A stretch of DNA of 63,920 nucleotides, filler included, from Hyphochytrium catenoides (GCA_900088475.1; 6 parts of 6 records of this genome joined end to end with filler, not necessarily neighbours in it); one strand, 5' to 3'; counted from the first letter of the whole stretch, positions 1 through 24,470 are shown. Translations and numbers: made by a program. Notes: generated by a model not told the origin, from the letters alone.

Positions 1-288
1 GGAGAACAGGGCAGTAGAGAGTGAGGCCTTACGTACTTCGTCTCTCTCTCTCTCTCTATGTGTGTGTGTCTCTCTCTCTTTATATGTGTGATTATCTTCT
101 TTTTCTCTCGCTTTGCCTCACCTTCTCTGTCATTTCCCTTCTTGGCCCTTCCTTGTCGCCCCTCTCCCTCTCTGGTTCGACCTTCCCTTCGGTTCTCTCT
201 CTATAACTCTCTCCCAGCTCACTCTCTCTCTCTCTCTCCCTGCTTCCTTCTCCTTGCTTCTTCTCTTCAACGCGATTTCCCATTGTAC

Positions 289-3200: not shown

Positions 3201-4084
3201 GAAGAAGACGAGAAGAGCACATGAGGATCACAAGCGAAAACGGTCGAGAGAGGAAGGGCAAAGAAAGAGAGAACAAGACAAGAGCCGCAGAAAAATTGAG
3301 AGAGAGAGATACAGAGAGAATGAGAGAGAGAGAGATGGAGAGACACAGAGAGAGAGAGAAACAGAAGAGAGGTTGACCTTGGAGCATGAAGGGATTGAAG
3401 GAATGACCAGCCATTAGAAGAGAACAACTGGCAGTGGGGGCAATCCCAAGGTTGAGATCTAGAGAAACAGTGAGCGAAAGTGCGCTTTCGGACCTGATGC
3501 GATCGGGGGCAGCGCTAAGAAGCTCGTCGGAGTCAGAGATCAACTTTCCTCCATTCTTCTTGATCTCGCTCTCCAGGTCTGACTTCAGAGGCTTCTAGAA
3601 GAGCATCGAAGGGAGAGATGAGGCGATGGCATGGAGAAGAAGAGATTGGGAGCAGAGAGCAGAAAGCGCCAACTCAGACTGTCGACTAACAAAGAGCTGG
3701 GATTATGGCTAGATATGGAGAACAACTGAGAGAGAAAGATATGGATCATAGGGAAGGAACAGTAGGAAACGGCAATTTAATCGAAAGCTGAAGGTTCAAC
3801 CAATCCATCAAAGGAGTCATTTGAGGCAGAGCCTGATACATTGTCCACAAAAAGAGAAAGAGAGAGATGTGCGGGCTGGCAGCGTACAGACCAGCGTATG
3901 CAGCGCAGGAAAGATAAAGAGACGGGTGGGGAAGGGGAGAGAGAAAGAGAGAAACAATGAAGAAAAAAAAGAAAAGAGAGCGAAGGCTTCGGGTGCTACT
4001 GCCAGAAAGACAGACGGAGCGAGGAAGAGTGGAAAGAGAGCGGGAGCGGGAGCGTGAGAGAAAGAGAGAGCGAGAGAGAGCGAG

Positions 4085-4144
<60 letters not shown>

Positions 4145-7008: not shown

Positions 7009-7467
7009 TCTGCTATTGTTAGAGGAGAGAGAGAGGTTTTCTTTTTCCTTTCTCTCTTCGCATCACTTGCTTATTGACTCTTCTCTCTCTCTTGCCTCCT
7101 CGCGCTTTCCTCTTTGCCTTCTTCCTGAAGTCCGCAACCTAACACCATCCTAGATCTCTCTCTCTCTCTCTCTCTCCTTCTTTTGCTCGCTCTCTCTCTC
7201 TCTCTCCCTGTGCAGTTAGTACGGAAGGAGAAGGCTGGGAGAGAAGATAGGTCGAAACAATGGGAAATGGACCCGCGAGCTATGTTCGAAGCCAAAGGTA
7301 ACACCGCCTCCTGGCTGATGGAGCTGCCGGATGTTATAGAACCTTACTGCCATCAAAGTATCTCTATTGCCCAGTAGAGAGAGGAAAGAGGAGCAAGACA
7401 GAGACAGACAGAGAAAGAAAGGCAGAGAGAGAGAGCTAGGGAGACGAGAGAGAGGGAGAGAGAGAGG

Positions 7468-7498
<31 letters not shown>

Positions 7499-8177
7499 TT
7501 GCAGAGAGAAAGTGAGAGTGGAAAAGACAAAGACAGAGCTACGTAAGAAGGGAAAAGAGAGAGGTAGAGATAGAAAAGAGAGAGAAGGACAAAGAGAGAA
7601 CGAGAACGAAGAGAGAGATAGAGAAAGAGAGAGATGAAGAGAAGACAGAGGGAGGAGAGAGAGGGGCAAGAGAAAGAGTTGAGGGAGACAGAGATGAAGA
7701 ACAGCAAAATTGCCAAATACACAAAGATTTAATTCCATCAATCCTTTCCGTTAACCGCTACCAAACGCTAATTCGACCACATTCATTCTTATTTTTGCGA
7801 TGAGAGATAAATTCGGTAGACGTTCAGTTTACGGAAGGTATTGACGACCTTTATTTTATTGCTATGCCAAGATCCGGAGAGAGAAACGTAATTCTCGGCA
7901 AACTAGCTGCAAGCTACCTACCATTTGGTTCTTCCTTCCTCTCCTCTGTGGGTCGCAGATTATTGTGGAAGAAAGGAAGTGCTGCTGCTGCTGCTTCTCC
8001 GTCGGTCGTGGTCCTACAAGGCCAAAGTATCATCTCCTTTGTCATTGTTCAACTGATCCAATGATGACTCTGAAGAGCGTTGCCCCCGTGCTTTATAAGT
8101 AGGGCAATGATCTCTGGCTGTTTGATCGACGATGAGGGACAGAGCACACCTTCTTGGGGAGCAGCAGAAGGTCTACT

Positions 8178-9092
8178 GTCATCAAGATCCGCTGGTGCGG
8201 CATCTGCCATTCTGACGTCCATCAAGGAGACTGGGGCCCAGCAAACCAGTATCCCTTGGTCCCTGGGCACGAGATCGTCGGCATCGTTGAGGAGATAGGC
8301 CCCAAGGTAACCCGATTCTCAGTCGGAGAGGGTAGGCATCGGCTGTATGGTCGACTGTTGCCGGAAATGTGAAGATTGTAAGGCGAAGGAGGAGTGCTAC
8401 TGCACTGGCGGCCAGATCCTCACCTACAATTCTGTGGGCAAGTACCGTCAGCCAACGCAGGGAGGATACTCTAACGTGATCGTGGTCGTTGAGGACCTTT
8501 TACTGAGGATCCCAGATGATATTGACTTTGCCGCTGCAGCGCCGCTTCTGTGCGCAGGGGTCACGACGTACTCTTACGTTGCGGAAATGGAACGTGAAGG
8601 CTGGCTCCAAGGTCGGTGTGGCTGGGCTTAGAGGGCTTGGCCACATGGGGCGCAGAGGTAACTGTCATCAGCACGAGTGAGAAGAAGCGGAAGGACGCCG
8701 AGCGGCTTGGCGCCGCGAACTTCCTGCTGTTTTCAGAAAGATCGAAGCGTAGCAACAACTTTGACCTCATTCTTGACACGATCTCAGCGCAGCACGACGT
8801 CAATGAGTACGCCGCGCTGCTTGCTAGAGACGGTGTTCTTTGCTTGCTAGGCGCTCCAGCGCATCCCCTGCAATTTTACGCTTTTACCCTTCTCTTCCGT
8901 CGGCACCCGATTGCCGGTTCTCTCATTGTCAGCATCCAACAAACGCACGAGATGCTAGATTTCTGCGGCAAGCATGGGATTGCCTGTGACATTGAGGTGG
9001 TGGATCCGAAGGAAGTGAATACAGCTTGGGATCGGCTACTGAAGAACGATGTCAAGTACAGGTTTGTGCTGGATATGAGCAAACTAAAGTGA
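8178..9092 (+). pseudogene. Zn-dependent NADP(H) alcohol dehydrogenase, cinnamyl alcohol dehydrogenase/YahK/AdhC family; intronless pseudogene
   Basis: Motifs CGICHSD, YPLVPGHEIVG, structural-Zn cysteines (DCCRKCEDC...C), TQGGYS, APLLCAGVTTYS and C-terminal DVKYRFVLD are spread over several frames. Frameshifts lie near 8330, 8577 and 8648, the N-terminal ~30 aa are missing, and the Rossmann motif reads GLRGLG. Confidence 0.88.
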
Positions 9093-9648: not shown

Positions 9649-10595
9649 CTATGATGAGACAGCGTGAAGGAGAACGGCGACTACTACTGTGAAAAGGGAC
9701 AAGACATAGTGTGGTCCAGAAAGGACGCTGGATGAGACAAATGGCGGCGGCGACGCCTGGCCAGGCATGAAGGGAGAGACATCCTGTGGCCGGTTGTCGG
9801 GAGATATAGGGAGACTTTCCCCTGCTTGAGATTGAATAGAAGGAGAAGTGGAAGGTTCTGAGGTCCCTTCGACTCTTGGTCCTGAAGTAGATGAGGGTGA
9901 TGCCTCTGTCGTCGTCTCGACAGCAACAGGTGTGACGGTAGGTGATGGAGAAGGCCCCGGGGCAGCGGTAGCAGATGACGAAGAGGTAGAAGGCTGGACA
10001 GATGGCTCTTTTGTCTCGTCTACCTTCCCAGAAGAAGACCAGGAGCCTCCAGAAATAAGAGACGATGGAGTGATACCGTCAGAGGAGACAGAGAAGGTCT
10101 TTCCAGCGGCGTCCGTGGCATGTAGAGTGAACTTGCCCTTGATATCCAGCCCACTGGCCAAGTAATAATTCAATCCACCAGCGCCAAAGGGCATCTCCAT
10201 AGTCCTGCCAGCTGGATATTCCATNNNNNNNNNNNNNNNNNNNNATGGGAGCTTGTGGCTCTCGTGAAAAGGTCATCCGCCAAATCCAGGTCGTGCTCTC
10301 CGCACTCTGGACATCGGTTGGTTATCATGCCAATGACAGACCTGGACCCATGTGATATCCGCACGCACCGACCGCACAGTTGCTGCATTCCCATCTTGTC
10401 CCATAGGACCTGGTTGATTGCTACGAAGCTCTTCTTTGCCTCTGCTGGGAGCTCCTTATACAAGCAAGCCCCACCCTGCCAGCCATCGCCATACGCAGTC
10501 AGCTCTCCGCTATATGACTCTCCAGCAAAGACAGCTGTGATACTCGCAGTAGCCACTAGGAGAACAACTAAGGTTGGCAGAGCTGGAGACATCAT
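9649..10595 (-). CDS. Expansin-like protein A (signal peptide, DPBB, CBM63, S/T/P stalk, GPI-like C-terminus); interrupted by an undersized assembly gap
   Basis: MMSPALPTLVVLLVATASITAVFA signal; TAYGDGWQGGAC, VAIN, CGRCVRI, TNRCPEC..DLDL before the gap at 10225-10244; EYPAG..LNYYLASG..GKFTLHATDAAG after it; hydrophobic tail YVLSLFTVVVAVLLHAVSS. The frame change across the N-run is explained by wrong gap length. Confidence 0.88.
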
Positions 10596-13500
10596 GATTG
10601 CCCTTCTTCTAGTGGTCACGTCAACAGCGAGGTTTGTTCTGTTGGTTTGATAGAGGAACGGGAAGCCTCTCGAGGGTATGGAAATTTGGATAATCATTGG
10701 CTGTTGAGCTGGTCGGCGGCGGCACTGCCTGGAAGAGGACAGCATCACCTAGTGCCTTTCTCTCATCAGCAGGTGCCCTCTCGTCTTCTTATCTCTTGAC
10801 ATCCATTGCCAACTCTATTGTCTGGCCTTGATGACAAGCTACCACCTCGCGCGCGCTCTTTGTCTCTCTATCCCATTGTGTCTCTACATAGACTCAAGCA
10901 CTCTGTCTTCTAAATCTGGGGCCTCTCTGACTCGTACTCTGTCTGGTGTTCCCCTATAGTATTTCTCCTTTATTTGAAGGGCCAAAAGCTTGGACATCAT
11001 CTGAGAGGCGCCAGTGGCAGCGCCATCTCTGGCTTTTCAGTGAGCTGGTCAACAGCATCAGTTTGTACATAAAATGTAGGGAGTAACGCCTCGAACGCGG
11101 AGTTGCGAGACAGAGCGATAGTGATAGCGCCACTAATAACACTGTCAAATGATGTTGAAGAGAGGCATGCCACGTTGGGCACTCCTAATCATGGTAGGAA
11201 GGTACGACAGCGTTACTACAACTACGAATAGGGTACTACAAACGAAAATAACCTGCCAAAAAAAAGCTAGCTATTTATACGGTAGGGCGATCATTCTGAC
11301 CCTACCCGCTTTATCTTCGGTTACGATTTCGATGTAAGCCCGGAATATTCGGTGAACCTGGGTTAACATTAGTCACTGAAAGGCCTACGAACTGGGTAGA
11401 CATCCACTACTTTCGCGATTATGTGCTCCTAGCGTCCCGTTTTCGAACGGGTTGTCACGACAGAACCCAAACAGCCTGGCCGTTGAACTGGTTCTACCGA
11501 TAGAAATGACGGCCATTGAGTTGTCATAAGCACGCCCGCTCGCACGCCAGAAATCGCGTCCTCTCATTGGCTGGATCTTTGTCGGTTCGGATGATGGTCC
11601 GTCCAAAACCTAAACGGCCATAGAGTCGTCACACTAGATTTAGAACATGATAACATCACCTTGTACCGTTACTGTACAAACAAACATCTGTAGGACATCC
11701 AAGGACCGCTTGCCAATCAAGAAATACGAACAGATTTATTGATTTCTATTATTACTCATAAAAAAAAATTATACTCCCATTAAACATGTAGACCCTGGCA
11801 TTTTGTAAAACGTTTCTTGCCAGCAAGGTTGTCAGTCATCCTGGTTCTTTCTTTTTATAAATTATGGAGCTTATTTATCAGAGTGCCCATATGACTACTA
11901 CTTTATTACGGAACATGTATTTTTTTACTTGTACAACATGCTGGCGTTTTGTAACTTGGAATAATATTGTAGAAAAAATTAAACCTCCGTTCCCTCTCAT
12001 TCTCTGGATCTTTCCTGTCAGAAGTCAGAACTTGAACGAAACTACTACAACTACTGTACCGTACAAGGAGTGTTCTTTTCCTCATTTTTGCATCCTCGAG
12101 TAGTAAGCCTTACTAGTAGCGAGCACAAAGGGACTCTAGGGTACAACTGCATGGCATAAATAAAAAAACATAAAACACCAAGGAAAAGTGTCAAGTGACT
12201 AAGTTACAATGAGAGAGAGAGAGAGAGACAAGAAAAAAAGACAAGGAGGCAGAGAGACACTAGAGAGACACGGCGCAGAGAGAGAGGCAGAGAGAGAGAA
12301 ACAGAGGGAGAGAGATAAGAGAGAGACGAGAGAGAGCACTTTCTTCTTTGAGTACTTCTTTTTTCGTCTTCTTCTTCTCTTTTTCTTCTTCTTCTCCTTT
12401 GTCTCCTCCCTTCTTGCTCTTCTTCTACTTCCGAGCGTAGTCTCTTCTTCCTCTTCCTCTTCTTCTTCAACGTAGTAGTAGTAGTACTAGCTATTGCATT
12501 TCTATAGATCTTAAGAATCATGATCAAAGTTTTCTCATTTCTTGGGGAAGGGCCGCCGTTCATTATGGACTGGAGGTAGAGCATTATCATCGGGGAGAAG
12601 AGGAAGAGGAATTGCTTCTTCTGCCGACCACCAACGTTCTGACGATCAACTGGCAACAAAGAGGATAATCGACGCGTTTTTTCCTTTCTTGTCAATGTCT
12701 GCTTGCCTGCTGCGACACTATCAGTATGTAGGATCGATTGGTCTCTAGCATTATTAAAAGTATTATCACCACTATATTCCATAGAATGTATCTACTAATG
12801 CTTCTTGTCGCCAAATGGAGTTCAAGAAGAGAGGTAGCTATTGGGCCGCTCCTCCTCCTCCTGCTGCTGCTGTTCATCCTCGTCTTCCATCGTCAGGAAA
12901 TAAAATGGCAGCTGCTGAGTTAAGAAACAGTAGCCAGAAAGAAGAGGTCTAGGGAAAGGAGTTAGCGTAACGCCAGTGTCGGTCTCTTTAGCTAGACTTC
13001 TTGATGGTCGATGAGTTGGGCATGGAGCCTTCTCAACGAAAGCAGCAATCTCTCAGTGTGCTTCCCATCAGTCCTCCTAGGAAGAAGAAGCATTTAGACA
13101 CCACAGTGTAAACAGTATCGCCCAAGAAGTAGTCGGCCGTAGTCGTAAGCACGCCATCAGAAGAGGAAGGACAACAGACATGAAGGGCAAACAGCCGTCG
13201 GACTCAGGAGATAGTTAGTTGTTGAGCTGGTGAACTCTAACAAATAAGAAGAAGAATACTATCCAGCGCCACCCTTTTCATACCGCTGATTGATGGGCTT
13301 CAGCTGTCAACGTTAAGCAACAAGAAGACCAACAACGGCTTTGATGAGAAGAACGGTAATAAGCTAGATAGGTCCCCTCTCCATGCCTTACGTTTGACAA
13401 TCAACATCCTCAAAGCGTCAAGCAGAAGAACGACAGCTAACCAAGAGGACGGCGGCTTCAAGGGCTTATTAAGAGAAATCCACACCTTTAAGCCTTACTC

Positions 13501-15312
13501 CTCCTCTGACTAGTAGCTAAGTAGCGACTATCCTTTGCCCAACAGCAGCTGGTCACCTATACAAGATGATACTAATACCGCTGGATAGACAGCAAGAACG
13601 TTCGGGTTGGCTTGATGTGCAATGACGACTGACGCCTCCTACTCTTATAAAGGACAGAAATGACTCTTCCTCCTCCGTTAACTCTTATTGATGAAAAACC
13701 TTGTTCCATAGCTTTGCTCACTACTGTTTGGAGGCGCGACTTCTTCTTCGAAGAGCTGTATCTCTCAGTCTGAGTAAGAAGCGCCGCCAACTTCGATATT
13801 GTGCTACTACTATTGCGGAGTCGAAGAGACAGTTTTATCGAAGCAGAAAGAAGAACAAGTACCGCGGAGAGACCTTCTTACTTGAGAGAAGAAAAGAAGA
13901 GAGAAAGACGAGAAGAGCGTTAAAAGAGTGATGAGGAGAGAGAGACAGGCAGAGCGAACGAACAGCATATCCAGTTGAGGAGGTAGTAATAATAATGAAC
14001 CGCAGTCTTCGGGAACTAGATAGTAGCATATAATAGAGCTGACCGGATGGTGCAGCAGGCTTCTGTTTGTTCAGAGAAACTGTTAAAGGGAAAAAAAGAA
14101 GAAGCTCGTCGGCAGGAGCACGTACTAATAAGGATAGAAGGCGGACCGAAACGCATGGCACCACTCCTGACGCCAGGCCGCATCATCCCCTCACTTTCAA
14201 TTTCTCCTTCTTCTCCCTCTCCTCTCACTCCCGTTGTCCGGAACTATGACCGTACGAGGAGGGAGGAGAGAGAGAGAACAATAAGGTGGACAAAGATGGC
14301 TAATGAGGATAGAGCAACAGCTACTCGAAATAAGAAGAGGAAATAGCCTCACAGACAGAGTCACAGAGATCAACAGTAATCTCTAGAAGAGCGCTCTACG
14401 AGAAGGAGAAGAGGGAGATGTAGAGAGGAGGGGAAGAGTGAAGAGAAAGAGGGAAACACGAGATCATCCTCATTCGTCCAGCCACGCCACCAGGAGTGAC
14501 GGTGATGAACTACTCTCTAGCGCCAGAGCGCGCACACTGACGACTGACTGAGGCGCGTGCTTCGCTCGTCTCAGATCGGCCTTCAGTGGATGTTGTGCAT
14601 TGCCTGCGTGGTCTGCCGTAGTATGACAAAGCTACAATCATAGAGATTGTTGTTATGGAGACCACCAGAGGTAGTGGAGGATGTAACGACGGCGCTGTAG
14701 AGCAAAACCGAGCGAGAGAAGAGAGACAGCAGAAGAGAGGAAAAGTCAGAAAGAGAAGAACAATAGAACTATCTAATAAGAAAGGAAGAGAGGAGAATAT
14801 AGGGCAAAGACGAGAAGAGAGGAATAGGAAGGAGGATGGAAGAGAAGAGGAGGAGAAAAGAAAGAGAAGGGATATCAAAATAAAACGAGAGAAAGAGAAA
14901 GAAAGGACGGGAACAAAGACGGGGGGAAAGAAAGAGAGGGAGCTGAGAAGCACGAGAGAGAGGGAGACAGAAGAAAGGAGACAGAGGACGAAAGAGAGAA
15001 GTGCCCAAGTAGACGAGTAATAAGAAATGCACTGTCTTCTTAGTAATGATACTGGCACCTAATAACAAGCTAGAGCACAATGAGATAAACCCTTGTCTTT
15101 CTCTTGGTGATGAGTAGGACGACCGGAGAGCTTTCGGAGAAGCTGCAGCGCTGGACTAAGATTCTGTTAAGACAGAGACCAATCGGTGTAGGCCTAGGAT
15201 GTCTATACCCCAATCAGAAGCCTGCCGGGCCCTGGCGTGCCTGCGGTCGTGACCACTGGCGCCACCACTAGAAGCATAGAGAAAGGAGGATGTGCCTCTC
15301 TCTCTCTCTCTA

Positions 15313-15350
<38 letters not shown>

Positions 15351-15655
15351 GGTCTGTTGTATGTCTTTATAGTCTTATCTTTCCCGCTCTGTCTCGTCCT
15401 ACAGGGCTAGTACTGTTTTACACTACTTGCTGTGAAGCTGCAACTCTGTCAACAGGATCTTTTCGGCCACGGGCTTTAGGTATGGAGACTGTATATCTTA
15501 GACGGTAGGAGGAGGAGACACAGAGAGAGAGAGATTGATGGAATGATTGACAGGAGATGGTACCAGGAGGGAGAGAGGCGACGAAAGAGTGAATGAGAGA
15601 GTCAGCAGAAGAGTGGAAACAATGAGGAGGAGGGGAAGAGAGAGGGAAGAGAGAG

Positions 15656-15695
<40 letters not shown>

Positions 15696-15713
15696 GAGAG
15701 AGAGAGAGAAGAA

Positions 15714-15786
<73 letters not shown>

Positions 15787-16160
15787 AGAAAGAGAGAGAG
15801 AGAGAAAGAGAAAGAAAGAAGAGAGAAGACCAGAAAGGGAGAGGGAGAGAGAGAGAGACAGGAAAAAGTGAGAGCCAGGGGAGAAAAAGTAGTAGTAGTG
15901 CTTGGGACCATTCCGGTAGGGAAGGAAGATCCATGCTACTGCTCACATCAACTAACAGGACCAACAAATGCAGATCCTGACCCAGGCAGCGGAAGAAGAG
16001 ACTCTCTTCCTTCTCATCCATTTTCACTTCTGCTTCCTCTCTCGCACCAGTGCAGCAGACACAGATATACTGCCCGCCAGGCCACAAGCGCGGTATATAC
16101 ACTTTTCTGCCCGCACTTTTTTCTCTCTCTATCTCTTCGCTTCCTTTTTGGTCAGCTAAC

Positions 16161-17465
16161 ATGGCCAACAAAAGTGGAAACTCTCTGTTCTCCCTCTTCT
16201 TTTTGCTCTTCTTCACCCTTCTCCTTAGCCTCTCCAGCCTGCCGAGGTCTCTTGCGTTCAGGGGAGACATCACGGCTTATGGAGATGGCTGGCAGGGCGG
16301 CGCGTGTCTCTATCAAGATCTGCCAGAGCCNNNNNNNNNNNNNNNNNNNNNNNNNNNNNNNNNNNNNNNNNNNNNNNNNNNNTCTGACTCTCTCTTCAAA
16401 GAGGCTACTGGCTCCCATCCCTCTCGACTGACGGCTTCTTGGGAGCTGGTGGACTGTGGGCCCGAGATGGGAGTGACTGGGAACGTTGGCTTCTTTACTA
16501 AAGACGGCTCTAACGGGAACTGGCTCGCTATTCATCCGATCAACTTCCGCTCTCCTATCACCAAGCTCTCCGTCGAATATCCTGCGGGAAGAGTGACGGA
16601 GATGCGCTTTGGCGTCTATGGACTCAACTATTACTTAGCAGCTGGGCTGGACATCAGAGGGCGGTTCACCCTTCACGCTACTGACGCTGCAGGAAGGACC
16701 ATCTCTGCTTCTGCAGAGTATGTCTCTGCCTCGAGTTATCTTGGAGGCGCTTGGGGAGGTCCGGGGCCCAGTCCTTCACCTTCTTATCCGCCTCCTTCTC
16801 CAGCTCCAGCTCCCTCTCCACCTTCTCCAGCTCCTTCTCCATCGGCACCTCGTCCTTCTCCATCTTCGCCGTCTCCTCCTCCGCCTTCTCCACCTTCACC
16901 TCCTTCTAGTCCTCCCTCGCCTGCCACTCCCGCGCCCACGACTCCTTCTCCTCCTCAACCAGCTCCAACCCCTGAAATGACTCCGGCTCCAGCACCTACT
17001 ACGTCTACGCCTTCCACTCTTCCTCCTTCCTCAGCAATAGTTCCTACAACGGCAGCAGCAACGACAGCTGCCAGTAGCTCCACTTCTCTTGGATCAAAGA
17101 CAGAGGAGTCACTCCAGGAAGAGACCATAAAGAAGGTTGAGAAGGTAGAAGAGTCGTCTCCAACACCGCTGGTCGCAGAAGAAAGAGCTCCAACTCCTTC
17201 ATCGCCTTCGAAAGAAGATGATGCCGCCGTGCCAAGCAGCAGTGATGCTGAGCCAGGACAGAAGAGCTCTTCTCCAGCAGCTGCTGTAGAAGATGCAGGA
17301 GGCGTGAGCGAGAGCACGGCTCAAGAAACAGCTCCTTTTGCACCTGAGAAACCTTCGTTTTCTTCTTCGTCTTCGCCATCCATTTACTCTGCCTCTTTCT
17401 TCTCCCTGATGAGTAGCTCTCTCTTGAGTTTATCCATATCTATGATCATACGTGCGCTTCTATGA
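16161..17465 (+). CDS. Expansin-like protein B (signal peptide, DPBB, CBM63, Pro/Ser-rich stalk, GPI-like C-terminus)
   Basis: ATG at 16161 followed by a hydrophobic signal; GDITAYGDGWQGGACLY; N-gap covers the DPBB core; KDGSNGNWLAIHPINFRSPITKL and NYYLAAG..GRFTLHATDAAG; SP/SPPPP repeats; hydrophobic end FFSLMSSSLLSLSISMIIRALL. Confidence 0.9.
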   Translation: MANKSGNSLFSLFFLLFFTLLLSLSSLPRSLAFRGDITAYGDGWQGGACLYQDLPEXXXXXXXXXXXXXXXXXXSDSLFKEATGSHPSRLTASWELVDCGPEMGVTGNVGFFTKDGSNGNWLAIHPINFRSPITKLSVEYPAGRVTEMRFGVYGLNYYLAAGLDIRGRFTLHATDAAGRTISASAEYVSASSYLGGAWGGPGPSPSPSYPPPSPAPAPSPPSPAPSPSAPRPSPSSPSPPPPSPPSPPSSPPSPATPAPTTPSPPQPAPTPEMTPAPAPTTSTPSTLPPSSAIVPTTAAATTAASSSTSLGSKTEESLQEETIKKVEKVEESSPTPLVAEERAPTPSSPSKEDDAAVPSSSDAEPGQKSSSPAAAVEDAGGVSESTAQETAPFAPEKPSFSSSSSPSIYSASFFSLMSSSLLSLSISMIIRALL

Positions 17466-17537
17466 GCTTTATAAGCTCCTTAGCGTTGCAGCAGCAGCAG
17501 TGAAAGACATCATAGTGGAGTGCACGATGTCTCTTCT

Positions 17538-17575
<38 letters not shown>

Positions 17576-19066
17576 CCTCCAAACTCAGCCGTCTGCGGTT
17601 TATCTTCATCTTTTCCCTTTATTAGATGTACACATAGCGCTCTTTTATTTATAGAGTGCGGAGCTTTAGCGCTCCGCTAACAAACTTTGCAGTTAATAGA
17701 GAATGGACTAGTCATTGCCAATGATATCTCTTTCCTTCTTAATGCCTTCCTAATCGTTAGGCCTCGGGTCTCTCTTCTTCAGTGTAAAGAAATGAAAGCA
17801 AGCAACATAACTCCAAAGCTCAGGACGCCGCGCAGCCGAAGAAGGAGCGCTAGCTTCCTCGTTGTCTGGCGCGCGGAGGGCCAAAGATGGGAGAGAATGT
17901 AGGCGCCGTAGGTTTGACAGGCGGTGTGAGCCGGAACTGACTTTCTGTTATTTATCTTGCCAGTGTTATTTCTCTCTCTCTTTTTTTCTCTCTCTCTCCG
18001 CCTGTCTGTCTCTCTCTCGCCCGCGGGTTCATCTTGGTAGCAGTTGGTTGAATCTTCTTTCCTAGTCTGTCCGTCAGTCTCTGTGTCTCTCTGGTTTAGC
18101 TCTCTCGCCCTTACTCTCTGCCTGTCCTCTTGAAATTTGCGCNNNNNNNNNNNNNNNNNNNNNNNNNNNNNNNNNNNNNNNNNNNNNNNNNNNNNNNNNN
18201 NNNNNNNNNNNNNNNNNNNNNNNNNNNNNNNNNNNNNNNNNNNNNNNNNNNNNNNNNCTCCCTGACTCCACATGATGGGTGGTGGTGAGGTGAGCGTACG
18301 TCGAGCAGACTGCCTTTCTTACGCAGGGTTAAGATCTCGGTGACGACAGCTCTAAGTCAAGCGATCCATCAGGATGTACGGCGAGAGAAAGACTCGGATA
18401 AGGAGACAGACGGCTATAGTAAGCATAAGAGAAGGAAGTCTCTCTCAATGGATCTCTCTCTCCCTCTCTCTCTTTTGTCTCTCAAGTTGTCTGTCTCTTT
18501 GACTCTCTCTCTCCCCTAACTCTGGCTCCCGAGTGCAGATGCTCTAAGCGGGGCGCCGGTGAATGTCAGTGGCCGGGACGGCGCGTGCCTGTACGGCCTG
18601 GACATGAGCTGCTCTGGCGTGCTGCGAGGCTTCCGCTGACGACGGAAGAGAGCTCTCAATCACATCACGGCCCCTGAGATGAAAGAGGCATTGAGACAGA
18701 GAAAGAGAGGAAAGTCGGAGTCGGTTGTAGAATTGTTAGGAAGAGACAGAGGGAAACAAGAGAGAGAGAGAAAAAGAGAGAGAGAGAAGAGGAACGGAGG
18801 CGTAGAAGGAATAGACGAAGCAGAGTGAGCAAGAGGTAATGAGAGAGAGAGAAGAGGCAGACAGGGAGAGAGACAGACAGACAAGGTGGACACTTTACGG
18901 GAGAGAGAGCAAGAGAGGGAAAAGGAGAGAGAGAGAGAGACGAGAGAGATGAGAGAGATGAGAGAGAGAGAGAGAAAAAGAGAGAGAGAGAAAAAGAGAG
19001 AGAGAGAGAAAAGAAAGGGAAAGGGAGAGAGAAGAAAGGGAAAGAGAGAGAGAAAGGGAAAGACAG

Positions 19067-19108
<42 letters not shown>

Positions 19109-20699
19109 GCGGAGAGAGCTTGACGCCAATGAGGAGTTGATGGCTTGGTGATGGTGGGTGTTGGCTCTGTGGACTCACTGAGTGCGTGCGAGCGTGGCTG
19201 CGTGATATGCATGCGGGGAACCAGAGGGTGTCAGACCAGAGCCAGAGGCAGACGTAGTTCAAGACAGAGAGAGGAATAGAGAACGTATTTGCCTAGGGAA
19301 GAGAGTATTAAAAAGAGATACAGAGAAGACACTAGCGACAGACAGAGTTTGGAGAGAGAGAAAGAGCCTGCTGTCATGGATGACTCTTCATATTAGCATG
19401 GCCTTTTAGAGGGTGAGCTGATGGAGACAGAGTTTGGATAGTAATTGAGATAGAGTCACCACAAGCCTAAGTATAAAACAGAAACACATGGAGGTATAGC
19501 GACGATAGGCTAGAGCAAGAGATTTGGTTTGACCAGGTTGAGTGGAGCAGAACGACCGCATCGAGACCTCCCCCAGGAGTGACGCCAACTTCTTTGACCA
19601 GTTAACAGACTTCAGCCAATCAGAATAGAGTAAAGATCGATATGCATCCAATCAGACGAGAGACCCTGCCCCCCACCGGCCAATGAGAGTGAAGCTGAGA
19701 GTCTGGCTATCCAGTCAGCGGCCGCCATCACCCTGGCGTGCCAACCTGTGTNNNNNNNNNNNNNNNNNNNNNNNNNNNNNNNNNNNNNNNNNNNNNNNNN
19801 NNNNNNNNNNNNNNNNNNNNNNNNNNNNNNNNNNNNNNNNNNNNNNNNNNNNNNNNNNNNNNNNNNNNCACTTTAGCTCGATCTTGTTCCCCCCACTTTC
19901 TTTCTCTCTATCTCGCCCTTTGGCCTCAGTTTCAACATCATTCGTTCCACCATCTGCCTGCTCGCAGCAACTCAAACTGGCTTCAACATCATCGCTTGTC
20001 TACTAGAAGCTGTACGAAGGGAAACAAAAGAAGAAAGAGAGTGGGGAGAGAAAGGAGACAAACAAAGAGCTGAACGTACCGATCAAAGGGGATGACGCAA
20101 GAATGGAGAGAGAGAGAGAGAGAGAGCTAGCAGGAGCCAGAGATGATTGGTGACGATTGACATGCATGGAACTTGAAGAGCAGCACCTGATTGTGTGCAT
20201 TCTCTCTGTTTCTTTTGAGCTCCTCACTCTTTTCTCCTACAGAACTAAGCCCGAGAGAGTCACAGAGAGAGAGAGACACTGCAGTCGTTGTCTTGAAGGG
20301 ACCTATTGGACAGTACGTGGTAAATGATGATGCTCATCATAACCACGCGAGCAACACTGCCACCTTTGTACAGGTCCTTGATCAGGAGGAGGGAAGAGAG
20401 AAAGGGAGAGACGAAGAGACACTGAGCAGGCAGAGAGAGAGAGAGAGAGAGAGAGCATTAGCGGAGAAACGAAGAGAGAGGGAGACAAAATGCCACCCAG
20501 TAGGGTTCATCTCCAGTCCTCACTCTCCAACTTCCCCCGTCCCGAGCACCTCCCTAGCCTACCAAACACAGCGCAGGAACTCAGGTCTAACCTACAACCC
20601 TGAGTGAACCAACATCCCGTGCCGCCCGCGTCCTCCGCTTCCTACATCTGATAAAGCTCCAAGTCGGAAAGGTTTGAAAAGCCTCAAGCACAAGACGAT

Positions 20700-21437
20700 A
20701 TGGCTCTCTTCTCGGCGCTATGCTCCAGCTTTCTCTTCTCTCTCTTAATTTCTTTCTCCCCTGCCTACGCCCAACAACGTACAGGAGACATCACGGCTTA
20801 TGGAGATGGCTGGCAGGGCGGCGCATGTCTTTATCAGGATTTGCCAGAGCCAGCCAAGAAGAGCTTTGTCGCCATCAACCAAGTTCTATGGGACAGCATG
20901 GGGATGCAGCAGGTCTGCGGCCGCTGTGTGAAGATCTCTTACGGAGGCAAAACCGTCATGGGAATGGTGACCAACCGCTGCCCAGAGTGCAAGGAAGGCG
21001 ATCTAGATCTGTCTGACTCTCTCTTTAAGGAGGCTACTGGCTCCCATCCCTCTCGATTGACGGCTTCCTGGGAGCTGGTGGACTGTGAGGATAGTATGGG
21101 AGTCACTGGGGATGTCGGTTTCTATGTGAAGGATGGAGTTAACGCCAACTGGCTCGCCTTGCAGCCCGTGAACTTCCGCTCTCCTATCACCAAGCTCTCC
21201 GTCGAGTATCCTGCGGGGAAGACAGTGGACATGCCCTTCGCAGGTGGCGCACTAAACTATTATCTAGCCAGCGGGCTAAACATCAATGGCAAGTTCACGG
21301 TCCGTGCGGAGGACGCGGAAGGGAAGAGCTACGAGGTCTCTGCGGATTCCATTAGGTCTTCCAGCTTCCTGACTGGCGCTTCACCGTTCCAAGCACAGGC
21401 CGAAGAGACGCCTACGGGCAATCTACGACGCGTTTAA
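20700..21437 (+). CDS. Expansin-like protein C (EXLX-type; signal peptide, DPBB, CBM63; soluble)
   Basis: Complete intronless 245-aa ORF: signal ending AYA, TAYGDGWQGGAC, VAINQ..W, CGRCVKI, TNRCPECKEGDLDLS, KDGVNANWLALQPVNFRSPI, NYYLASG, KFTVRAEDAEG; no stalk or GPI tail. Confidence 0.93.
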   Translation: MALFSALCSSFLFSLLISFSPAYAQQRTGDITAYGDGWQGGACLYQDLPEPAKKSFVAINQVLWDSMGMQQVCGRCVKISYGGKTVMGMVTNRCPECKEGDLDLSDSLFKEATGSHPSRLTASWELVDCEDSMGVTGDVGFYVKDGVNANWLALQPVNFRSPITKLSVEYPAGKTVDMPFAGGALNYYLASGLNINGKFTVRAEDAEGKSYEVSADSIRSSSFLTGASPFQAQAEETPTGNLRRV

Positions 21438-23190
21438 GAGGTTGAGAAGAAGAAGGCGGCCCTTTTATAAGACAGTCAGTTTTGCGTGGGTCCCGCTATA
21501 AGGCTTTCTCTACCGGCATGCGGCTGCTCTTATGACGATAGAGTGGTGGAAGCAGCAGAGCTGGGCTACTTAGTTTGCCGCTTATAGAAGCAAAGAAGCG
21601 GGAGCAATGCTCCTCTACTATTCTGAAGCTTTGTCCTATCGAAGGCTAGAGATTGCTGCTCGTGAAGCTCCTGGAAAAGATAATAATAGATGTTAATTAT
21701 TGTTCACTCTTGCTCCTACCTTCTCCAAAAGTTCGTCTCTTTCAGGCTCGTCTCGTCCGCCTTCACTACCTTCCTCTCCTGCTCTCCAATAGGTGAGGCC
21801 TCTGTTACCCTGCTAATAACCACCAGGGGATTAATCCTTCTGCTGCTCCTTCAATTCTCCTTGTGCTCCTTCTATCCTCCTATTATTTTCTTACTTGTTT
21901 GCTGTCTGCTGCTGCTGTCCCACCAGAGGAGGTCCACGTCCTTGTCTGCATGAACAGTGCTGTCTACTTTTCCTTCTTTCTTCACTTGCACCGAGACCTA
22001 ACTAGGTACTACCGCCGCCAAGCAGTCAGCTCACTTAGGTACTAGTTGGGGATGTTGTTCTCTAAGTAAGGGCAGCCAACAATCATCAAGTTTCAGGAGA
22101 AGCCGGAGGCAGACTACTTCTTGTCGCTGGGAGGACGGAGGAAATAGGAGGGACTGAGATGCCTCGACTGCTGCTGCTGCTTGCGGCGCTGGTATAGTTG
22201 GAGGCGTGGTATCCTCCTCCTCTTGGCAGCGCATCTTTTTTCTTCGAAGCTCTAACCTCTCCAACGACAAGGGCGGTCATATGCTGCTGTCTTTCTCTTT
22301 CTTCAGTATCGAAGGGTAAGGAGGAGGAGGACGCAAGAGAGACGACTATCGTCTTTCTTCTCTTCAACTCCGTGACGGATCATGCTGCAGGTGCTGGCCG
22401 ACGGACAGACGAACACACACTTATCGTCACACTGAAAAGAAGCGACCGCTAACGACCACACCTGAAACTATCCCAAATGTTTAGACCAAGATTTCACCAG
22501 ACCTTATATTATAAAATTATTGAAAGCTTCATAGGATTCCACTTTGAAATGAAAGGTACTTGATAGTTGAAGCAAGCTCAAGGAAATTGTTGAGGAAATA
22601 GATCATTATTATTAGTTATCAAAGCGGCTGGGCTGGAACGACCGCACCCTGATACAGAACCAAGAAGTTTGAGAGACAGAGAGGTAAAGAGACAGAGAGA
22701 GAGAGACCAAGGGAGACAGAGAAAGAGAGAGAAAGACAAAGCCAGAGAGAGAGAGAGATACAGAGCAAGAGAGAGAGAGAAGAGAGAAGGAAAGAGAGAG
22801 AGAGAGAGAAGGAAAGAAACGGAGAGAGAGAAAGGAGAGGGAGAGAGATGTAAGAGAGAGAGACTGGAAGAGGGAGAGGATGGAGCATGAAGAGAACTTG
22901 ACAGGGAGGCTGGGAGAGGAATCAGCAGCTGCTATTTCTTGCGGATGCTCGGTCTCCTCAGCACTGAGACTGACAGTCTCTCCACAGTCCTCTCCGCTAT
23001 TTATCTCGCAGCGCCAGGCAGCTGACAGGGAAAGCTATACCTGGGTCTGCCGCTCCTCTTATTATTCTCTCTCACCAGCGACTCGCCTGGTACGAGGAGC
23101 AGTTGTTGGAGAGAAAGAAAGGAAGCAGAAGAGTCACTCAACGACAGACATCAGACAGCAGGCAGTTGGGCCAAGAGTAGAAAGAGCAAG

Positions 23191-24470
23191 ATGGCAAAGG
23201 GCTCCTTTTCAGGGAAGAAGGTCGCCGTCGTCGGCGCAACCGGCGCCGTCGGCATTGAGATGGTCAAAGTTCTCTATGAGCGCAAGTTTCCTATTGTGGA
23301 GCTTCACCTCTTCGCCTCAGCGCGCTCTGCGGGAAAGACGGTCTCTACGCCATTTGGAGAGAAGACAATTGAAGCGTTTAGTGTGGAGGCAGTAAGAGAG
23401 ATGGATATCGTGCTGATGGCAGGTGCGTAGTATGGAAACTCTAGAAAGGGGAATTGAAAGAGAGAGACAGACACACAGACAGACAGAAAGAAAGACAGAA
23501 AGAGAGGCTCTGCCTTCTTTTCCCATTCTCTTCTATTCCTCTTTGCTTGTGTTCTGCCCTTGCGGCTTCTTCTGATGCTGCCTTGCCAATGGTGTCCAAT
23601 CGCATAATATCTGTTTGTTCTTTTCCTTCCTTTTCTTCTCTTCTTCGTATCGTGCTCTGCGGAACCTTCTCTTTCTCCTGCCGCGCACTTTACCTCTCTC
23701 TCTCTCTCTCTCTCACTCTCACTCTCTTTTTCACTCCCTCTCCCTCTCTCTCGCTCCCTCTCTCTCTCTCTCTCTCTCTGTCTTCCTGTCCATTGCACTC
23801 TGTCTTATTCCCTTTATCTTCTAACTCACTCTCTCTTCTCTTTGCCTTTCTCTCTCTTCCTGCCTTCTCTCCGGCAGTCTCTGGAACCTTTGCCCAAGAG
23901 AATTGTCCGAAAATAGTTGAAGGCGCCGATGGCCCCGTAGTTATTGATAATTCCTCAGCCTTCCGCTATGATCCTGAGGTGCCGCTCGTCATTCCCGAGA
24001 TTAACGGCTATAAAGTGAAAAATGCGCGCTTGATAGCGAATCCGAACTGCACAACGGCGGTGGCGGCGATGGCGCTGTGGCCCATTCATTGCCGGTTTGG
24101 ACTGAAGAAGGTCATTATCTCGACCTATCAGGCTGCCAGCGGGGCAGGGGCAGAGGTAAGAGAGGAGTTGAAAGAGAAGAGATGGAAAAGATGGGGGAGA
24201 GCGAGGCAGGAACCGAGAGCGATGGAGAAGTAGCGTCAGAAAGAGAGAGCTAAAGAGAGGAGCTTGTGTTACTATATTGTGGGGCGAGAGTCAGGGAAGA
24301 GAGAGAGAGAGAGAGAGAATTCAGTGGAGCGCAGGAGAGAGTTAAGAAGGGGACGGACAGGCACAGAGAGGACATGCGGTAGTTTATGGCCTATTGCTAA
24401 AGCTTTGGGCTTCAGGGAATGGAGGAGCTGCTGAATGAGACGAAGGCAGTCATCAATGGTCAAAAAGCAG
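23191..24470 (+). CDS. asd: Aspartate-semialdehyde dehydrogenase (bacterial/plant-type), 3'-truncated at contig end
   Basis: Exons 23191-23422, 23878-24155, 24416-24470, all GT-AG. Motifs KVAVVGATGAVG, ASARSAGK, VIDNSSAFR, PLVIPEIN, catalytic IANPNCTT, STYQAASGAGAEGMEEL. No N-terminal transit peptide. Confidence 0.95.

What the first reader, a model, noticed from the sequence alone, without database searches (positions are those of the whole stretch)
9649..21437. Three-gene microbial expansin island with tethered and soluble variants
Seen: three intronless DPBB+CBM63 paralogues within 12 kb, separated by decayed DNA, in a genome where many neighbouring housekeeping genes are intron-rich. A and B have long S/T/P stalks and hydrophobic GPI-like tails; C is secreted without a tail. 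Known: EXLX expansins are patchily distributed wall-loosening proteins of plant-associated microbes and have often moved horizontally. Inference: a surface-display plus diffusible wall-loosening or adhesion system in a flagellated protist, acting on a plant/algal host or on its own cyst wall. This is the best candidate for an undescribed system here.
Basis: partly seen in the sequence, partly recalled or inferred. Interest (0 to 1): 0.8.

Follow-up and report, generated by a model that had tools for sequence, protein, structure and literature searches.

The report
Three clustered protist expansin genes
Three neighbouring intronless genes in an unidentified intron-rich protist encode secreted cell-wall-loosening expansin proteins, two on long stalks with a membrane-anchor-like tail and one free. 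This layout is already known in oomycetes, so the cluster is fairly ordinary, but its closest relative sits in a small DNA virus.

Summary
Three paralogues are present: A (minus strand, 9649-10595), B (plus, 16161-17465) and C (plus, 20700-21437). C matches bacterial and fungal EXLX expansins over both domains by sequence (B. subtilis YoaJ, E 1.4e-12) and by predicted fold (Foldseek E about 1e-16).

A and B carry Ser/Pro/Thr-rich stalks of about 110 and 215 aa that end in hydrophobic tails. C has neither. Assembly gaps cut A and B inside the conserved module. If each gap holds what C has there (153 and 160 nt), both reading frames stay open.

The genes are under purifying selection: Ka/Ks is 0.04 between C and a copy in a related species. 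Their third-position GC content matches that of the neighbouring spliced genes.

The spacers are GA/CT low-complexity DNA like the rest of the piece. They hold no expansin remnants, so "decayed DNA" is not supported.

The claim of an undescribed system is not supported either. Phytophthora parasitica has 12 such proteins, six with a C-terminal membrane segment, and Dictyostelium has nine expansin-like genes.

One new point emerged. The three genes form a 100/100-supported clade with the expansin of a virus-like element that encodes a helicase-polymerase fusion, an A32 ATPase and VLTF3. The direction of transfer is unresolved.

Verdict: new member of a known kind.

The parts
9649..10595 (-). 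Expansin paralogue A, whole gene as assembled: signal peptide, DPBB domain, assembly gap, end of D2, stalk, hydrophobic tail, stop.
   Evidence: ORFs; sequence; tblastn; Pfam DPBB_1/EXPB1_D1 weak hits on the N-terminal piece.
10524..10595 (-). A: predicted signal peptide (24 aa, ends ..AVFA).
   Evidence: Hydropathy maximum 2.58 over 15 residues. Heuristic only; no predictor was available.
10225..10244 (.). Assembly gap inside A. It replaces about 153 nt (the equivalent of C residues 117-167, the D1/D2 junction).
   Evidence: The flanks are in frame only if the true length is 153 nt or another multiple of three.
9718..10044 (-). A: Ser/Pro/Thr-rich stalk (about 110 aa).
   Evidence: Composition.
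9652..9717 (-). A: C-terminal tail of 22 aa with a 14-residue hydrophobic core running almost to the stop. It is preceded by a run of Ser and a short polar spacer, so it looks like a GPI signal or a membrane anchor.
   Evidence: Hydropathy; sequence.
16161..17465 (+). Expansin paralogue B, whole gene as assembled.
16161..16256 (+). B: predicted signal peptide (32 aa, ends ..RSLA).
   Evidence: hydropathy maximum 2.55. Heuristic.
16331..16382 (.). Assembly gap inside B. It replaces about 160 nt (the equivalent of C residues 52-104, most of D1 including the CPEC..DLDLS motif).
   Evidence: 170+160 = 330 nt keeps the frame.
16383..16757 (+). B: end of D1 plus D2 (125 aa), 67% identical to C.
16758..17396 (+). 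B: Pro/Ser/Ala-rich stalk (about 215 aa) with SPPPP/SPP extensin-like runs, followed by an acidic Ser-rich segment.
17397..17462 (+). B: moderately hydrophobic C-terminal tail (22 aa), preceded by a run of Ser.
   Evidence: mean KD over the last 15 residues 1.9.
20700..21437 (+). Expansin paralogue C: complete, 245 aa, soluble form. Signal peptide 20700-20771, D1 about 20772-21086, D2 about 21087-21383, disordered 17-aa end.
   Evidence: The orthologue contigs L008-L010 are colinear with it.
18143..18257 (.). Assembly gap in the B-C spacer, not in a recognisable gene.
19752..19868 (.). Assembly gap in the B-C spacer, not in a recognisable gene.
23218..24179 (+). Context: two exons of an aspartate-semialdehyde dehydrogenase gene (23218-23421 and 23874-24179) split by an intron of about 450 nt. 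This shows the contig is from an intron-bearing eukaryote.
8347..9092 (+). Context: exons of a zinc-type alcohol dehydrogenase-like gene immediately beside A.
   Evidence: ORF translations. Assignment from sequence motifs, not tested with a tool.

Best explanation
The locus is a lineage-specific tandem family of three expansin genes of the microbial, EXLX-like kind in an unidentified intron-rich protist.

Each protein enters the secretory pathway through an N-terminal signal peptide. Each carries a cysteine-stabilised double-psi beta-barrel domain (D1) followed by a CBM63-like beta-sandwich (D2).

C is released as a free 24-kDa protein. A and B hold the same module at the cell surface on a probably O-glycosylated Ser/Pro/Thr stalk. 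The stalk ends in a C-terminal hydrophobic signal, either a GPI-attachment signal or a membrane anchor.

Most likely mechanism (inferred, not shown): the module binds a beta-glucan wall polymer and loosens it without hydrolysis. It would act mainly on the organism's own cellulose-containing wall or cyst during growth, germination or spore release. The tethered forms would act at the membrane-wall interface and the free form would diffuse through the wall.

Shown: identity, fold, architecture, paralogy, purifying selection, and residence in the host genome. Inferred: the substrate, the own-wall target, and the type of anchor.
For: - Identity: phmmer of C against PDB hits B. subtilis YoaJ/EXLX1 at E 1.4e-12 over residues 22-212. 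Streptomyces, Talaromyces, Xanthomonas and Clavibacter expansins follow.
- Fold: the AlphaFold model (pLDDT 73.6; folded core mostly 73-95, dipping to about 65 in two 10-residue blocks) gives Foldseek top hits to the same expansins at E 4e-16 to 3e-13 over about 210 columns. Plant beta-expansins come next. Single-domain DPBB proteins and GH45 are far weaker.
- Functional residues: the equivalents of EXLX1 T12, E75 and D82 are kept (T32, E96, D103), and six Cys are invariant across the family.
- Family size: 3201 relatives at E<=1e-3. Named relatives are 'expansin' or 'Expansin-like EG45' proteins of oomycetes and a green alga.
- Paralogy: A, B and C with C's orthologue group at SH-aLRT 94. They fall in a 100/100 clade in the careful tree.
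- Selection: Ka/Ks is 0.043 for C against its orthologue and 0.23-0.26 for C against B.
- Residence: GC3 is 0.57-0.66, against 0.59-0.64 in neighbouring exons.
- Architecture. The same signal peptide, module, stalk and anchor layout occurs in relative P0136 and a few others.
- Own-wall use has precedent. Dictyostelium ExpL3 binds cellulose and affects stalk morphogenesis (PMC4408306). Oomycetes with cellulosic walls carry multiple expansins (10.1101/637728).
Against: - Single-sequence Pfam hits (DPBB_1 at 17.8-18.5 bits, EXPB1_D1, Barwin) are all below gathering thresholds, and nothing hits D2.
- Two of the three aromatic residues of the EXLX1 cellulose-binding face are not aromatic here. W125 aligns with N150 and Y157 with L185. 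Those columns are aromatic in 123 of 152 family members. Cellulose may therefore bind weakly, or another polymer may be the target.
- EXLX1 D71 aligns with N92.
- A and B are each interrupted by an assembly gap in the conserved module, so their integrity is inferred.
- No expression data for this organism. No wall chemistry is known because the organism is unidentified.
- GPI against transmembrane anchoring could not be tested.
Confidence: 0.7

Rival explanations
1. Same proteins, different target. They would be offensive or adhesive factors that loosen or grip the cellulose wall of a plant or algal host or prey. The tethered forms would act as surface adhesins and C as a diffusible wall softener.
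For: Bacterial, fungal and oomycete expansins are concentrated in plant-associated organisms. It is openly unresolved whether oomycete expansins serve morphogenesis or host colonisation (10.1101/637728; PMC4176579). A long stalk with a binding module at its tip is a typical adhesin layout.
Against: There is no information on the organism's lifestyle. The reduced aromatic platform argues against strong binding to crystalline cellulose. The nearest cellular relatives with names are Saprolegniales, many of which are animal pathogens or saprotrophs with their own cellulosic walls, though that link is weak (49/59).
Confidence: 0.2
2. The family is virus-derived. A viral expansin was endogenised in this lineage and then duplicated and fitted with stalks and anchors. 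In this reading the genes are domesticated viral wall-breaching factors.
For: The closest relatives outside the lineage (51-57% identity) are encoded in virus-like contigs of 24-32 kb. They sit next to a PIF1-helicase/protein-primed PolB fusion, an A32 packaging ATPase and VLTF3. The viral genes fall inside a 100/100 clade with A, B, C and P0136 on a long stem. The viral contigs (0.49-0.50 GC) and the window (about 0.49) have similar base composition.
Against: The window holds no other viral gene (tblastn). Codon-position GC matches the host genes and synonymous sites between paralogues are saturated, so any transfer is old. The inner branching of the clade is unresolved and the tree is unrooted. 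The opposite direction, host to virus, is at least as likely, because the viral gene is a single accessory gene close to the end of most of the contigs fetched, with at least one more gene beyond it in L002 and L006.
Confidence: 0.15
3. A and B are pseudogenes or assembly chimeras, and only C is a real gene.
For: Both A and B have gaps inside the conserved module. The flanks of A are out of frame as written. A 68-nt patch of B beside its gap is 94% identical to C, while the rest is 75-83% identical. That could be read mis-placement.
Against: Outside the gaps, both have long open frames with no stops. This includes 137- and 242-aa low-complexity extensions ending in hydrophobic tails. Ka/Ks is below 0.3 where measurable. 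C-length fillers restore both frames exactly.
Confidence: 0.08

Closest known systems
Oomycete CBM63 / expansin-like proteins (for example the 12 in Phytophthora parasitica; 'Expansin-like EG45 domain-containing' proteins of Aphanomyces, Saprolegnia, Thraustotheca and Lagenidium)
   Same: Eukaryotic microbial expansin module with the same six Cys and the CPEC..DLDLS motif. Multi-gene families that mix short soluble members with members carrying long C-terminal extensions and a C-terminal membrane segment (PMC4176579).
   Different: The window clade sits on its own long stem, and its link to the Saprolegniales clade is weak (49/59). The window proteins have N and L where most family members have aromatic residues in D2. 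The organism itself is not an annotated oomycete: its ASADH exon is at most 80% identical to any hit.
Bacillus subtilis EXLX1 (YoaJ) and other bacterial or fungal EXLX expansins with solved structures
   Same: Two-domain fold aligned end to end. The T12, E75 and D82 equivalents are conserved. The proteins are secreted.
   Different: About 24% identity. The bacterial proteins lack the disulfide cysteines and have no stalk or anchor. The W125 and Y157 equivalents of EXLX1 are lost here, and D71 is N.
Dictyostelium expansin-like proteins (expL1-9)
   Same: A protist multi-gene expansin family used on the organism's own cellulose. ExpL3 binds cellulose (PMC4408306). One family member retrieved here (P0180) has a Thr/Ser stalk and a hydrophobic C-terminus and looks dictyostelid-like. 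Its origin was not verified.
   Different: A different branch of the family. Dictyostelium genes contain introns (expL3 has one), while the three here have none.
Expansin genes in giant-virus (NCLDV-like) inserts of Klebsormidium
   Same: A precedent for a virus carrying an expansin next to a VLTF3 gene, proposed to help cross the host wall (PMC5294986).
   Different: Those are plant-like expansins in large-virus fragments. Here the viral carrier is a contig of about 24-32 kb with a protein-primed PolB fused to a PIF1 helicase, and its expansin belongs to the protist clade of this window.

Membership tests
Expansin superfamily, microbial EXLX-like type | Two-domain architecture: N-terminal double-psi beta-barrel (D1) packed against a C-terminal beta-sandwich (D2, CBM63) | tested here: met
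   phmmer to 2bh0/3d30 over residues 22-212, E 1.4e-12. Foldseek top 12 hits are all two-domain expansins, E 4e-16 to 3e-8, about 210-245 aligned columns.
Expansin superfamily, microbial EXLX-like type | Conserved D1 surface residues needed for wall loosening in EXLX1 (T12, D71, Y73, E75, D82; D82 is the critical one, from my own knowledge of the EXLX1 mutagenesis work) | tested here: inconclusive
   T32, E96 and D103 are kept in A and C (in the gap in B, apart from T32). D71 aligns with N92 and Y73 with C94. C94 is the family-wide Cys of CPEC.
Expansin superfamily, microbial EXLX-like type | Linear aromatic platform on D2 (EXLX1 W125, W126, Y157) that binds cellulose | tested here: not met
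   Only W151 (= W126) is kept. N150 and L185 replace the other two. Those columns are aromatic in 123 of 152 relatives. This depends on the alignment. Y187/Y188 nearby might compensate.
Expansin superfamily, microbial EXLX-like type | Non-hydrolytic wall creep or weakening activity | not testable with these tools
   Needs recombinant protein and an extensometer or paper-weakening assay.
Pfam DPBB_1 (PF03330) / EXPB1_D1 (PF22514) | Score at or above the curated gathering threshold | tested here: not met
   17.8-18.5 bits against 28.8, and 15.3-17.8 against 27. More distant relatives P0003-P0005 do carry a precomputed PF03330 hit.
GPI-anchored surface protein (A and B) | N-terminal signal peptide, plus a C-terminal hydrophobic segment with no cytosolic tail, preceded by a short polar spacer and small omega-site residues | tested here: inconclusive
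   Hydropathy and sequence fit for A (SSS, a polar spacer of about 7 aa, then a 14-aa hydrophobic core and 5 more residues to the stop). The fit is weaker for B. No GPI predictor was available. Relative P0136 instead has a membrane segment followed by an 11-aa tail.
Oomycete CBM63/expansin-like family | Phylogenetic placement within the oomycete clade | tested here: inconclusive
   SH-aLRT 93 in the quick 152-row tree, but 49/59 in the careful 48-row tree.
Polinton-like / small protein-primed-PolB dsDNA viruses (carrier of the sister gene; not part of the window) | Protein-primed PolB, A32-type packaging ATPase, and double jelly-roll capsid proteins | tested here: inconclusive
   PolB (47.5 bits), PIF1 (51.8), A32 (43.8) and VLTF3 (33) all pass Pfam thresholds. 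No capsid protein was recognised. The single-sequence model of the 587-aa candidate reached pLDDT 32.7.

The most novel reading that the evidence does not exclude
The expansin clade of this protist lineage has been exchanged with a virus-like dsDNA element, seen on contigs of about 24-32 kb (complete size unknown), that encodes a PIF1-helicase/protein-primed PolB fusion, an A32 ATPase and VLTF3. That virus would deploy a host-type secreted expansin to open the wall of hosts related to the window's organism. This would be the first expansin reported in a small, polinton-like-sized virus. It would also tie an unidentified protist lineage to its virus.
Probability: 0.4. Interest if true: 0.55.

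Novelty: new member of a known kind. Interest (0 to 1): 0.3.

Why it matters
The cluster adds a well-supported expansin family, with tethered and free forms side by side, to a protist lineage that has no annotated genome in the collections searched. This fits the view that wall-bearing eukaryotic microbes generally keep expansins.

Two details deserve a specialist's attention. First, two of the three cellulose-platform aromatics are lost in this clade, which hints at a different or weaker polysaccharide target. Second, a virus-borne copy falls inside the same tight clade, which offers a handle on virus-host gene flow and on how small viruses of walled protists get through the wall.

Neither detail changes how expansins are understood.

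Tried and rejected
- Pfam on single sequences gave only sub-threshold D1 hits and nothing for D2, the stalks or the B pieces.
- Organism identification failed. The exact protein C is not on record. Paper searches for the assembly and run accessions found nothing. The ASADH exon search gave at most 80% identity, with stramenopiles (Hondaea, oomycetes, diatoms) and dinoflagellates on top. Only 'probably SAR' can be said.
- The search for orthologues of B returned only C's orthologue.
- A scan of IMG/VR viral contigs with the family profile found no relative.
- The capsid of the virus-like element was not found. PDB and Pfam sequence searches were empty, and the single-sequence AlphaFold model was unusable at pLDDT 32.7, so no fold search was run on it.
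- No terminal inverted repeats could be checked, because the contig ends are incomplete.
- Contaminant or recent transfer was rejected. The genes match neighbouring spliced genes in GC3, and no viral gene lies in the window.
- 'Decayed DNA' as expansin pseudogene debris was rejected. There are no extra fragments even at E 10.
- Rfam found nothing.
- The metagenome and prokaryote genome scans were not used, because they would add no names or context that bear on the verdict.
Full report
**What is there**

The ORF list, the raw sequence and tblastn with expansin queries show exactly three homologous loci in the piece:
- A on the minus strand, ATG at 10595 and stop at 9649-9651.
- B on the plus strand, 16161-17465.
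- C on the plus strand, 20700-21437.

C is an uninterrupted 245-aa ORF. No further fragments appear even at E = 10.

**Assembly gaps**

Two of the four gaps fall inside genes.
- In A, 20 N replace the stretch that in C is residues 117-167 (153 nt). As written, the two flanks are in different frames.
- In B, 52 N replace the equivalent of C residues 52-104 (160 nt).
- A has 351 nt before its gap and B has 170 nt. C-length fillers give 504 and 330 nt, both multiples of three.

The data are therefore fully compatible with intact genes. The N-run lengths are placeholders, and integrity is inferred rather than shown.

The gaps sit where the paralogues are most alike. A 68-nt patch of B next to its gap is 94% identical to C, against 75-83% elsewhere. 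The likely cause is that the assembler could not resolve the paralogues, or there was local gene conversion.

The other two gaps (18143-18257 and 19752-19868) lie in the B-C spacer.

**Identity**

Single-sequence Pfam scans give only sub-threshold D1 hits (DPBB_1, EXPB1_D1, Barwin). Stronger evidence comes from three directions.
- Sequence against structures: phmmer against PDB aligns C residues 22-212 with B. subtilis YoaJ/EXLX1 at E 1.4e-12. Streptomyces, Talaromyces, Xanthomonas and Clavibacter expansins follow, and both domains are covered.
- Predicted fold: an AlphaFold model built on seven homologues has mean pLDDT 73.6. The folded core is mostly 73-95, with two 10-residue blocks near 65, and only the signal peptide and the last 17 residues are disordered. 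Foldseek against PDB returns the same expansins first (E 4e-16 to 3e-13, about 210 columns). Grass pollen beta-expansins come next. Single-domain DPBB proteins (papain inhibitor, kiwellin, loosenin) and GH45 endoglucanases come far behind.
- Family: a profile search finds 3201 relatives at E<=1e-3. Those with names are oomycete 'Expansin-like EG45 domain-containing' proteins, a Picochlorum 'carbohydrate-binding protein', and JGI 'expansin' calls.

**Residues**

The alignment maps EXLX1 positions onto C as follows.
- T12, E75 and D82 correspond to T32, E96 and D103. All three are conserved.
- D71 corresponds to N92.
- Y73 corresponds to C94. This is one of six Cys that are nearly invariant in the family (C43, C73, C76, C94, C97, C129) and absent from the bacterial proteins.

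On D2, only W151 (= W126) of the aromatic triad survives.
- N150 and L185 stand where 123 of 152 relatives have Y, W or F.
- The viral sister keeps two Trp at the first two of these positions (150 and 151) but, like the window proteins, has Leu at 185.
- This is a real departure from the canonical cellulose-binding face, though it depends on the alignment.

**Architecture**

All three proteins start with a hydrophobic segment followed by a small-x-small motif (AYA/Q, VFA/G, SLA/F).

After D2, the extensions differ.
- A continues for about 135 aa, rich in S, P and T. It ends in a 14-residue hydrophobic core five residues from the stop.
- B continues for about 240 aa, about a quarter Pro and a quarter Ser, with SPPPP-type runs. 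It ends in a Ser-rich, moderately hydrophobic 22-aa tail.
- C stops 17 residues after D2 with a hydrophilic end.

The tails fit a GPI signal in outline, but no predictor was available. The closest cellular relative, P0136, has a membrane segment followed by an 11-residue tail. The anchor type is therefore open.

Among 157 family members, 89 have C-terminal extensions of 60 aa or more, and 47 of those are S/T/P-rich. Only a handful also end hydrophobically.

**Are they real, resident genes?**

- Three Logan runs each contain a contig of about 1 kb encoding a 95-96% identical protein (84% identical DNA). These contigs are colinear with C and its flanks.
- Ka/Ks between them is 0.043. Between C and B it is 0.23-0.26. 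Other pairs are saturated at synonymous sites. The duplications are therefore old and the genes are constrained.
- GC3 of the expansin modules (0.57-0.66) matches the neighbouring alcohol-dehydrogenase-like and ASADH exons (0.59-0.64).
- ASADH is split by an intron of about 450 nt. The contig is from an intron-bearing eukaryote, and the expansins are neither contamination nor a recent import.

The spacers have the same GA/CT low-complexity character as the rest of the piece. They contain no convincing ORFs and no Rfam match.

**Organism**

The organism could not be named. The best named ASADH matches are stramenopiles (Hondaea 80%, oomycetes 70-77%, diatoms) and dinoflagellates. No near-identical protein exists in the collections.

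**Phylogeny and the virus link**

In a 152-row tree, A, B, C and C's orthologue group together (SH-aLRT 94). Their neighbours are the P0002 cluster and P0136 (98). Saprolegniales expansins lie further out (93).

A careful 48-row tree confirms an 8-member clade at 100/100 on a long stem. It leaves the inside of the clade unresolved, and the oomycete link is weak (49/59).

P0136 lies on a eukaryote-looking contig and shares the stalk-and-anchor layout.

The P0002 cluster (51-57% identical to C) is different.
- Every contig carrying it is gene-dense and about 50% GC.
- These contigs encode a 1865-aa PIF1-helicase/protein-primed PolB fusion, an A32-type packaging ATPase (43.8 bits) and a VLTF3-like factor (33 bits). 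All of these pass Pfam thresholds.
- The contigs are 24.1-24.5 kb in several runs and 32 kb in a JGI metagenome. One 4-kb contig is in NCBI assembly GCA_009612975.1.
- None of the other viral genes has any trace in the window.

A virus-like element thus carries a secreted expansin of exactly this protist clade. The direction of transfer is not resolved. I lean towards host-to-virus capture. No capsid gene could be recognised, and IMG/VR holds no relative.

**Comparison with what is known**

- Microbial expansins are documented in Amoebozoa, stramenopiles, a haptophyte and one alveolate. Oomycetes carry several per genome, and whether they act on the organism's own wall or a host wall is an open question (10.1101/637728).
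- P. parasitica has 12 CBM63 expansin-like proteins. Six have a single C-terminal membrane segment, and several have neighbouring locus numbers (PMC4176579).
- Dictyostelium has nine expL genes. ExpL3 binds cellulose and alters stalk morphogenesis (PMC4408306).
- Expansins in giant-virus inserts were reported in Klebsormidium (PMC5294986). No paper in the library pairs 'expansin' with 'polinton-like'.

The 'tethered plus soluble' family is therefore a known pattern found in a new lineage.

**Verdict**

The locus is a new member of a known kind, with interest of about 0.3. The most novel reading still open is the virus-host exchange of this expansin.

Noticed in passing
L011:19965-20765 (minus), L015, L002:465-1265, L004:109-909, L001:232-1038: The nearest non-lineage homologue of the window's expansins (266-269 aa, with a signal peptide and two Trp at the first two platform positions of D2) lies close to the end of most of the virus-like contigs fetched, which are 24-32 kb. 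At least one more gene lies beyond it in L002 and L006. The contigs also encode a PIF1-helicase/pPolB fusion (1865 aa), an A32 ATPase, a VLTF3-like protein and several large ORFans. They were seen in at least seven Logan runs, a JGI metagenome and one NCBI assembly.
   Followed up: partly
window 16263-16330 vs 20784-20851: A 68-nt patch of B directly beside its assembly gap is 94% identical to C. The rest of the B/C alignment is 75-83% identical. This points to gene conversion or reads of C mis-placed into B.
   Followed up: partly
window 21147-21152 and 21252-21254 (C residues N150/W151 and L185); same columns in B: The window clade and P0136 have lost two of the three aromatic residues of the canonical CBM63 cellulose-binding face. 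Most of the family keeps them, and the viral sister keeps one of the two (Trp at 150, but Leu at 185 like the window).
   Followed up: partly
window 1-4100, 7200-7750, 12200-12350, 14500-15900, 17520-18030, 18700-19130, 22600-23800: Long GA- or CT-rich microsatellite-like tracts with strong strand asymmetry (GC skew up to 0.45) fill introns and spacers throughout the piece. They generate many spurious 'SLSLSL' and 'ERERER' ORFs.
   Followed up: no
window 16758-17000: The stalk of B contains extensin-like SPPPP/SPP/APAP runs. This suggests hydroxyproline or O-glycosylation-type modification, as in plant and algal wall glycoproteins.
   Followed up: no
window 4172-5221 and 5515-7008 (minus strand): Two long low-complexity ORFs (349 and 497 aa), rich in Glu, Lys, Ser and Pro, one with KKGAAG repeats. 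They are probably exons of a host gene of unknown function.
   Followed up: no
L014:4648-6036: P0136 is a 462-aa cellular relative from another unidentified eukaryote (run SRR32051698). It has a signal peptide, an expansin module, a Thr/Ser stalk, a membrane segment and an 11-aa cytosolic tail. It shows that the tethered layout predates the split of these lineages.
   Followed up: partly
L008, L009, L010: Three runs (SRR24052875/86/87) each give a contig of about 1 kb with nearly the same ends, covering C's orthologue plus about 130 nt upstream (93-130 nt in the three contigs) and 130-150 nt downstream. This looks like a transcript assembly and would mean the gene is expressed in a sister species.
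   Followed up: partly
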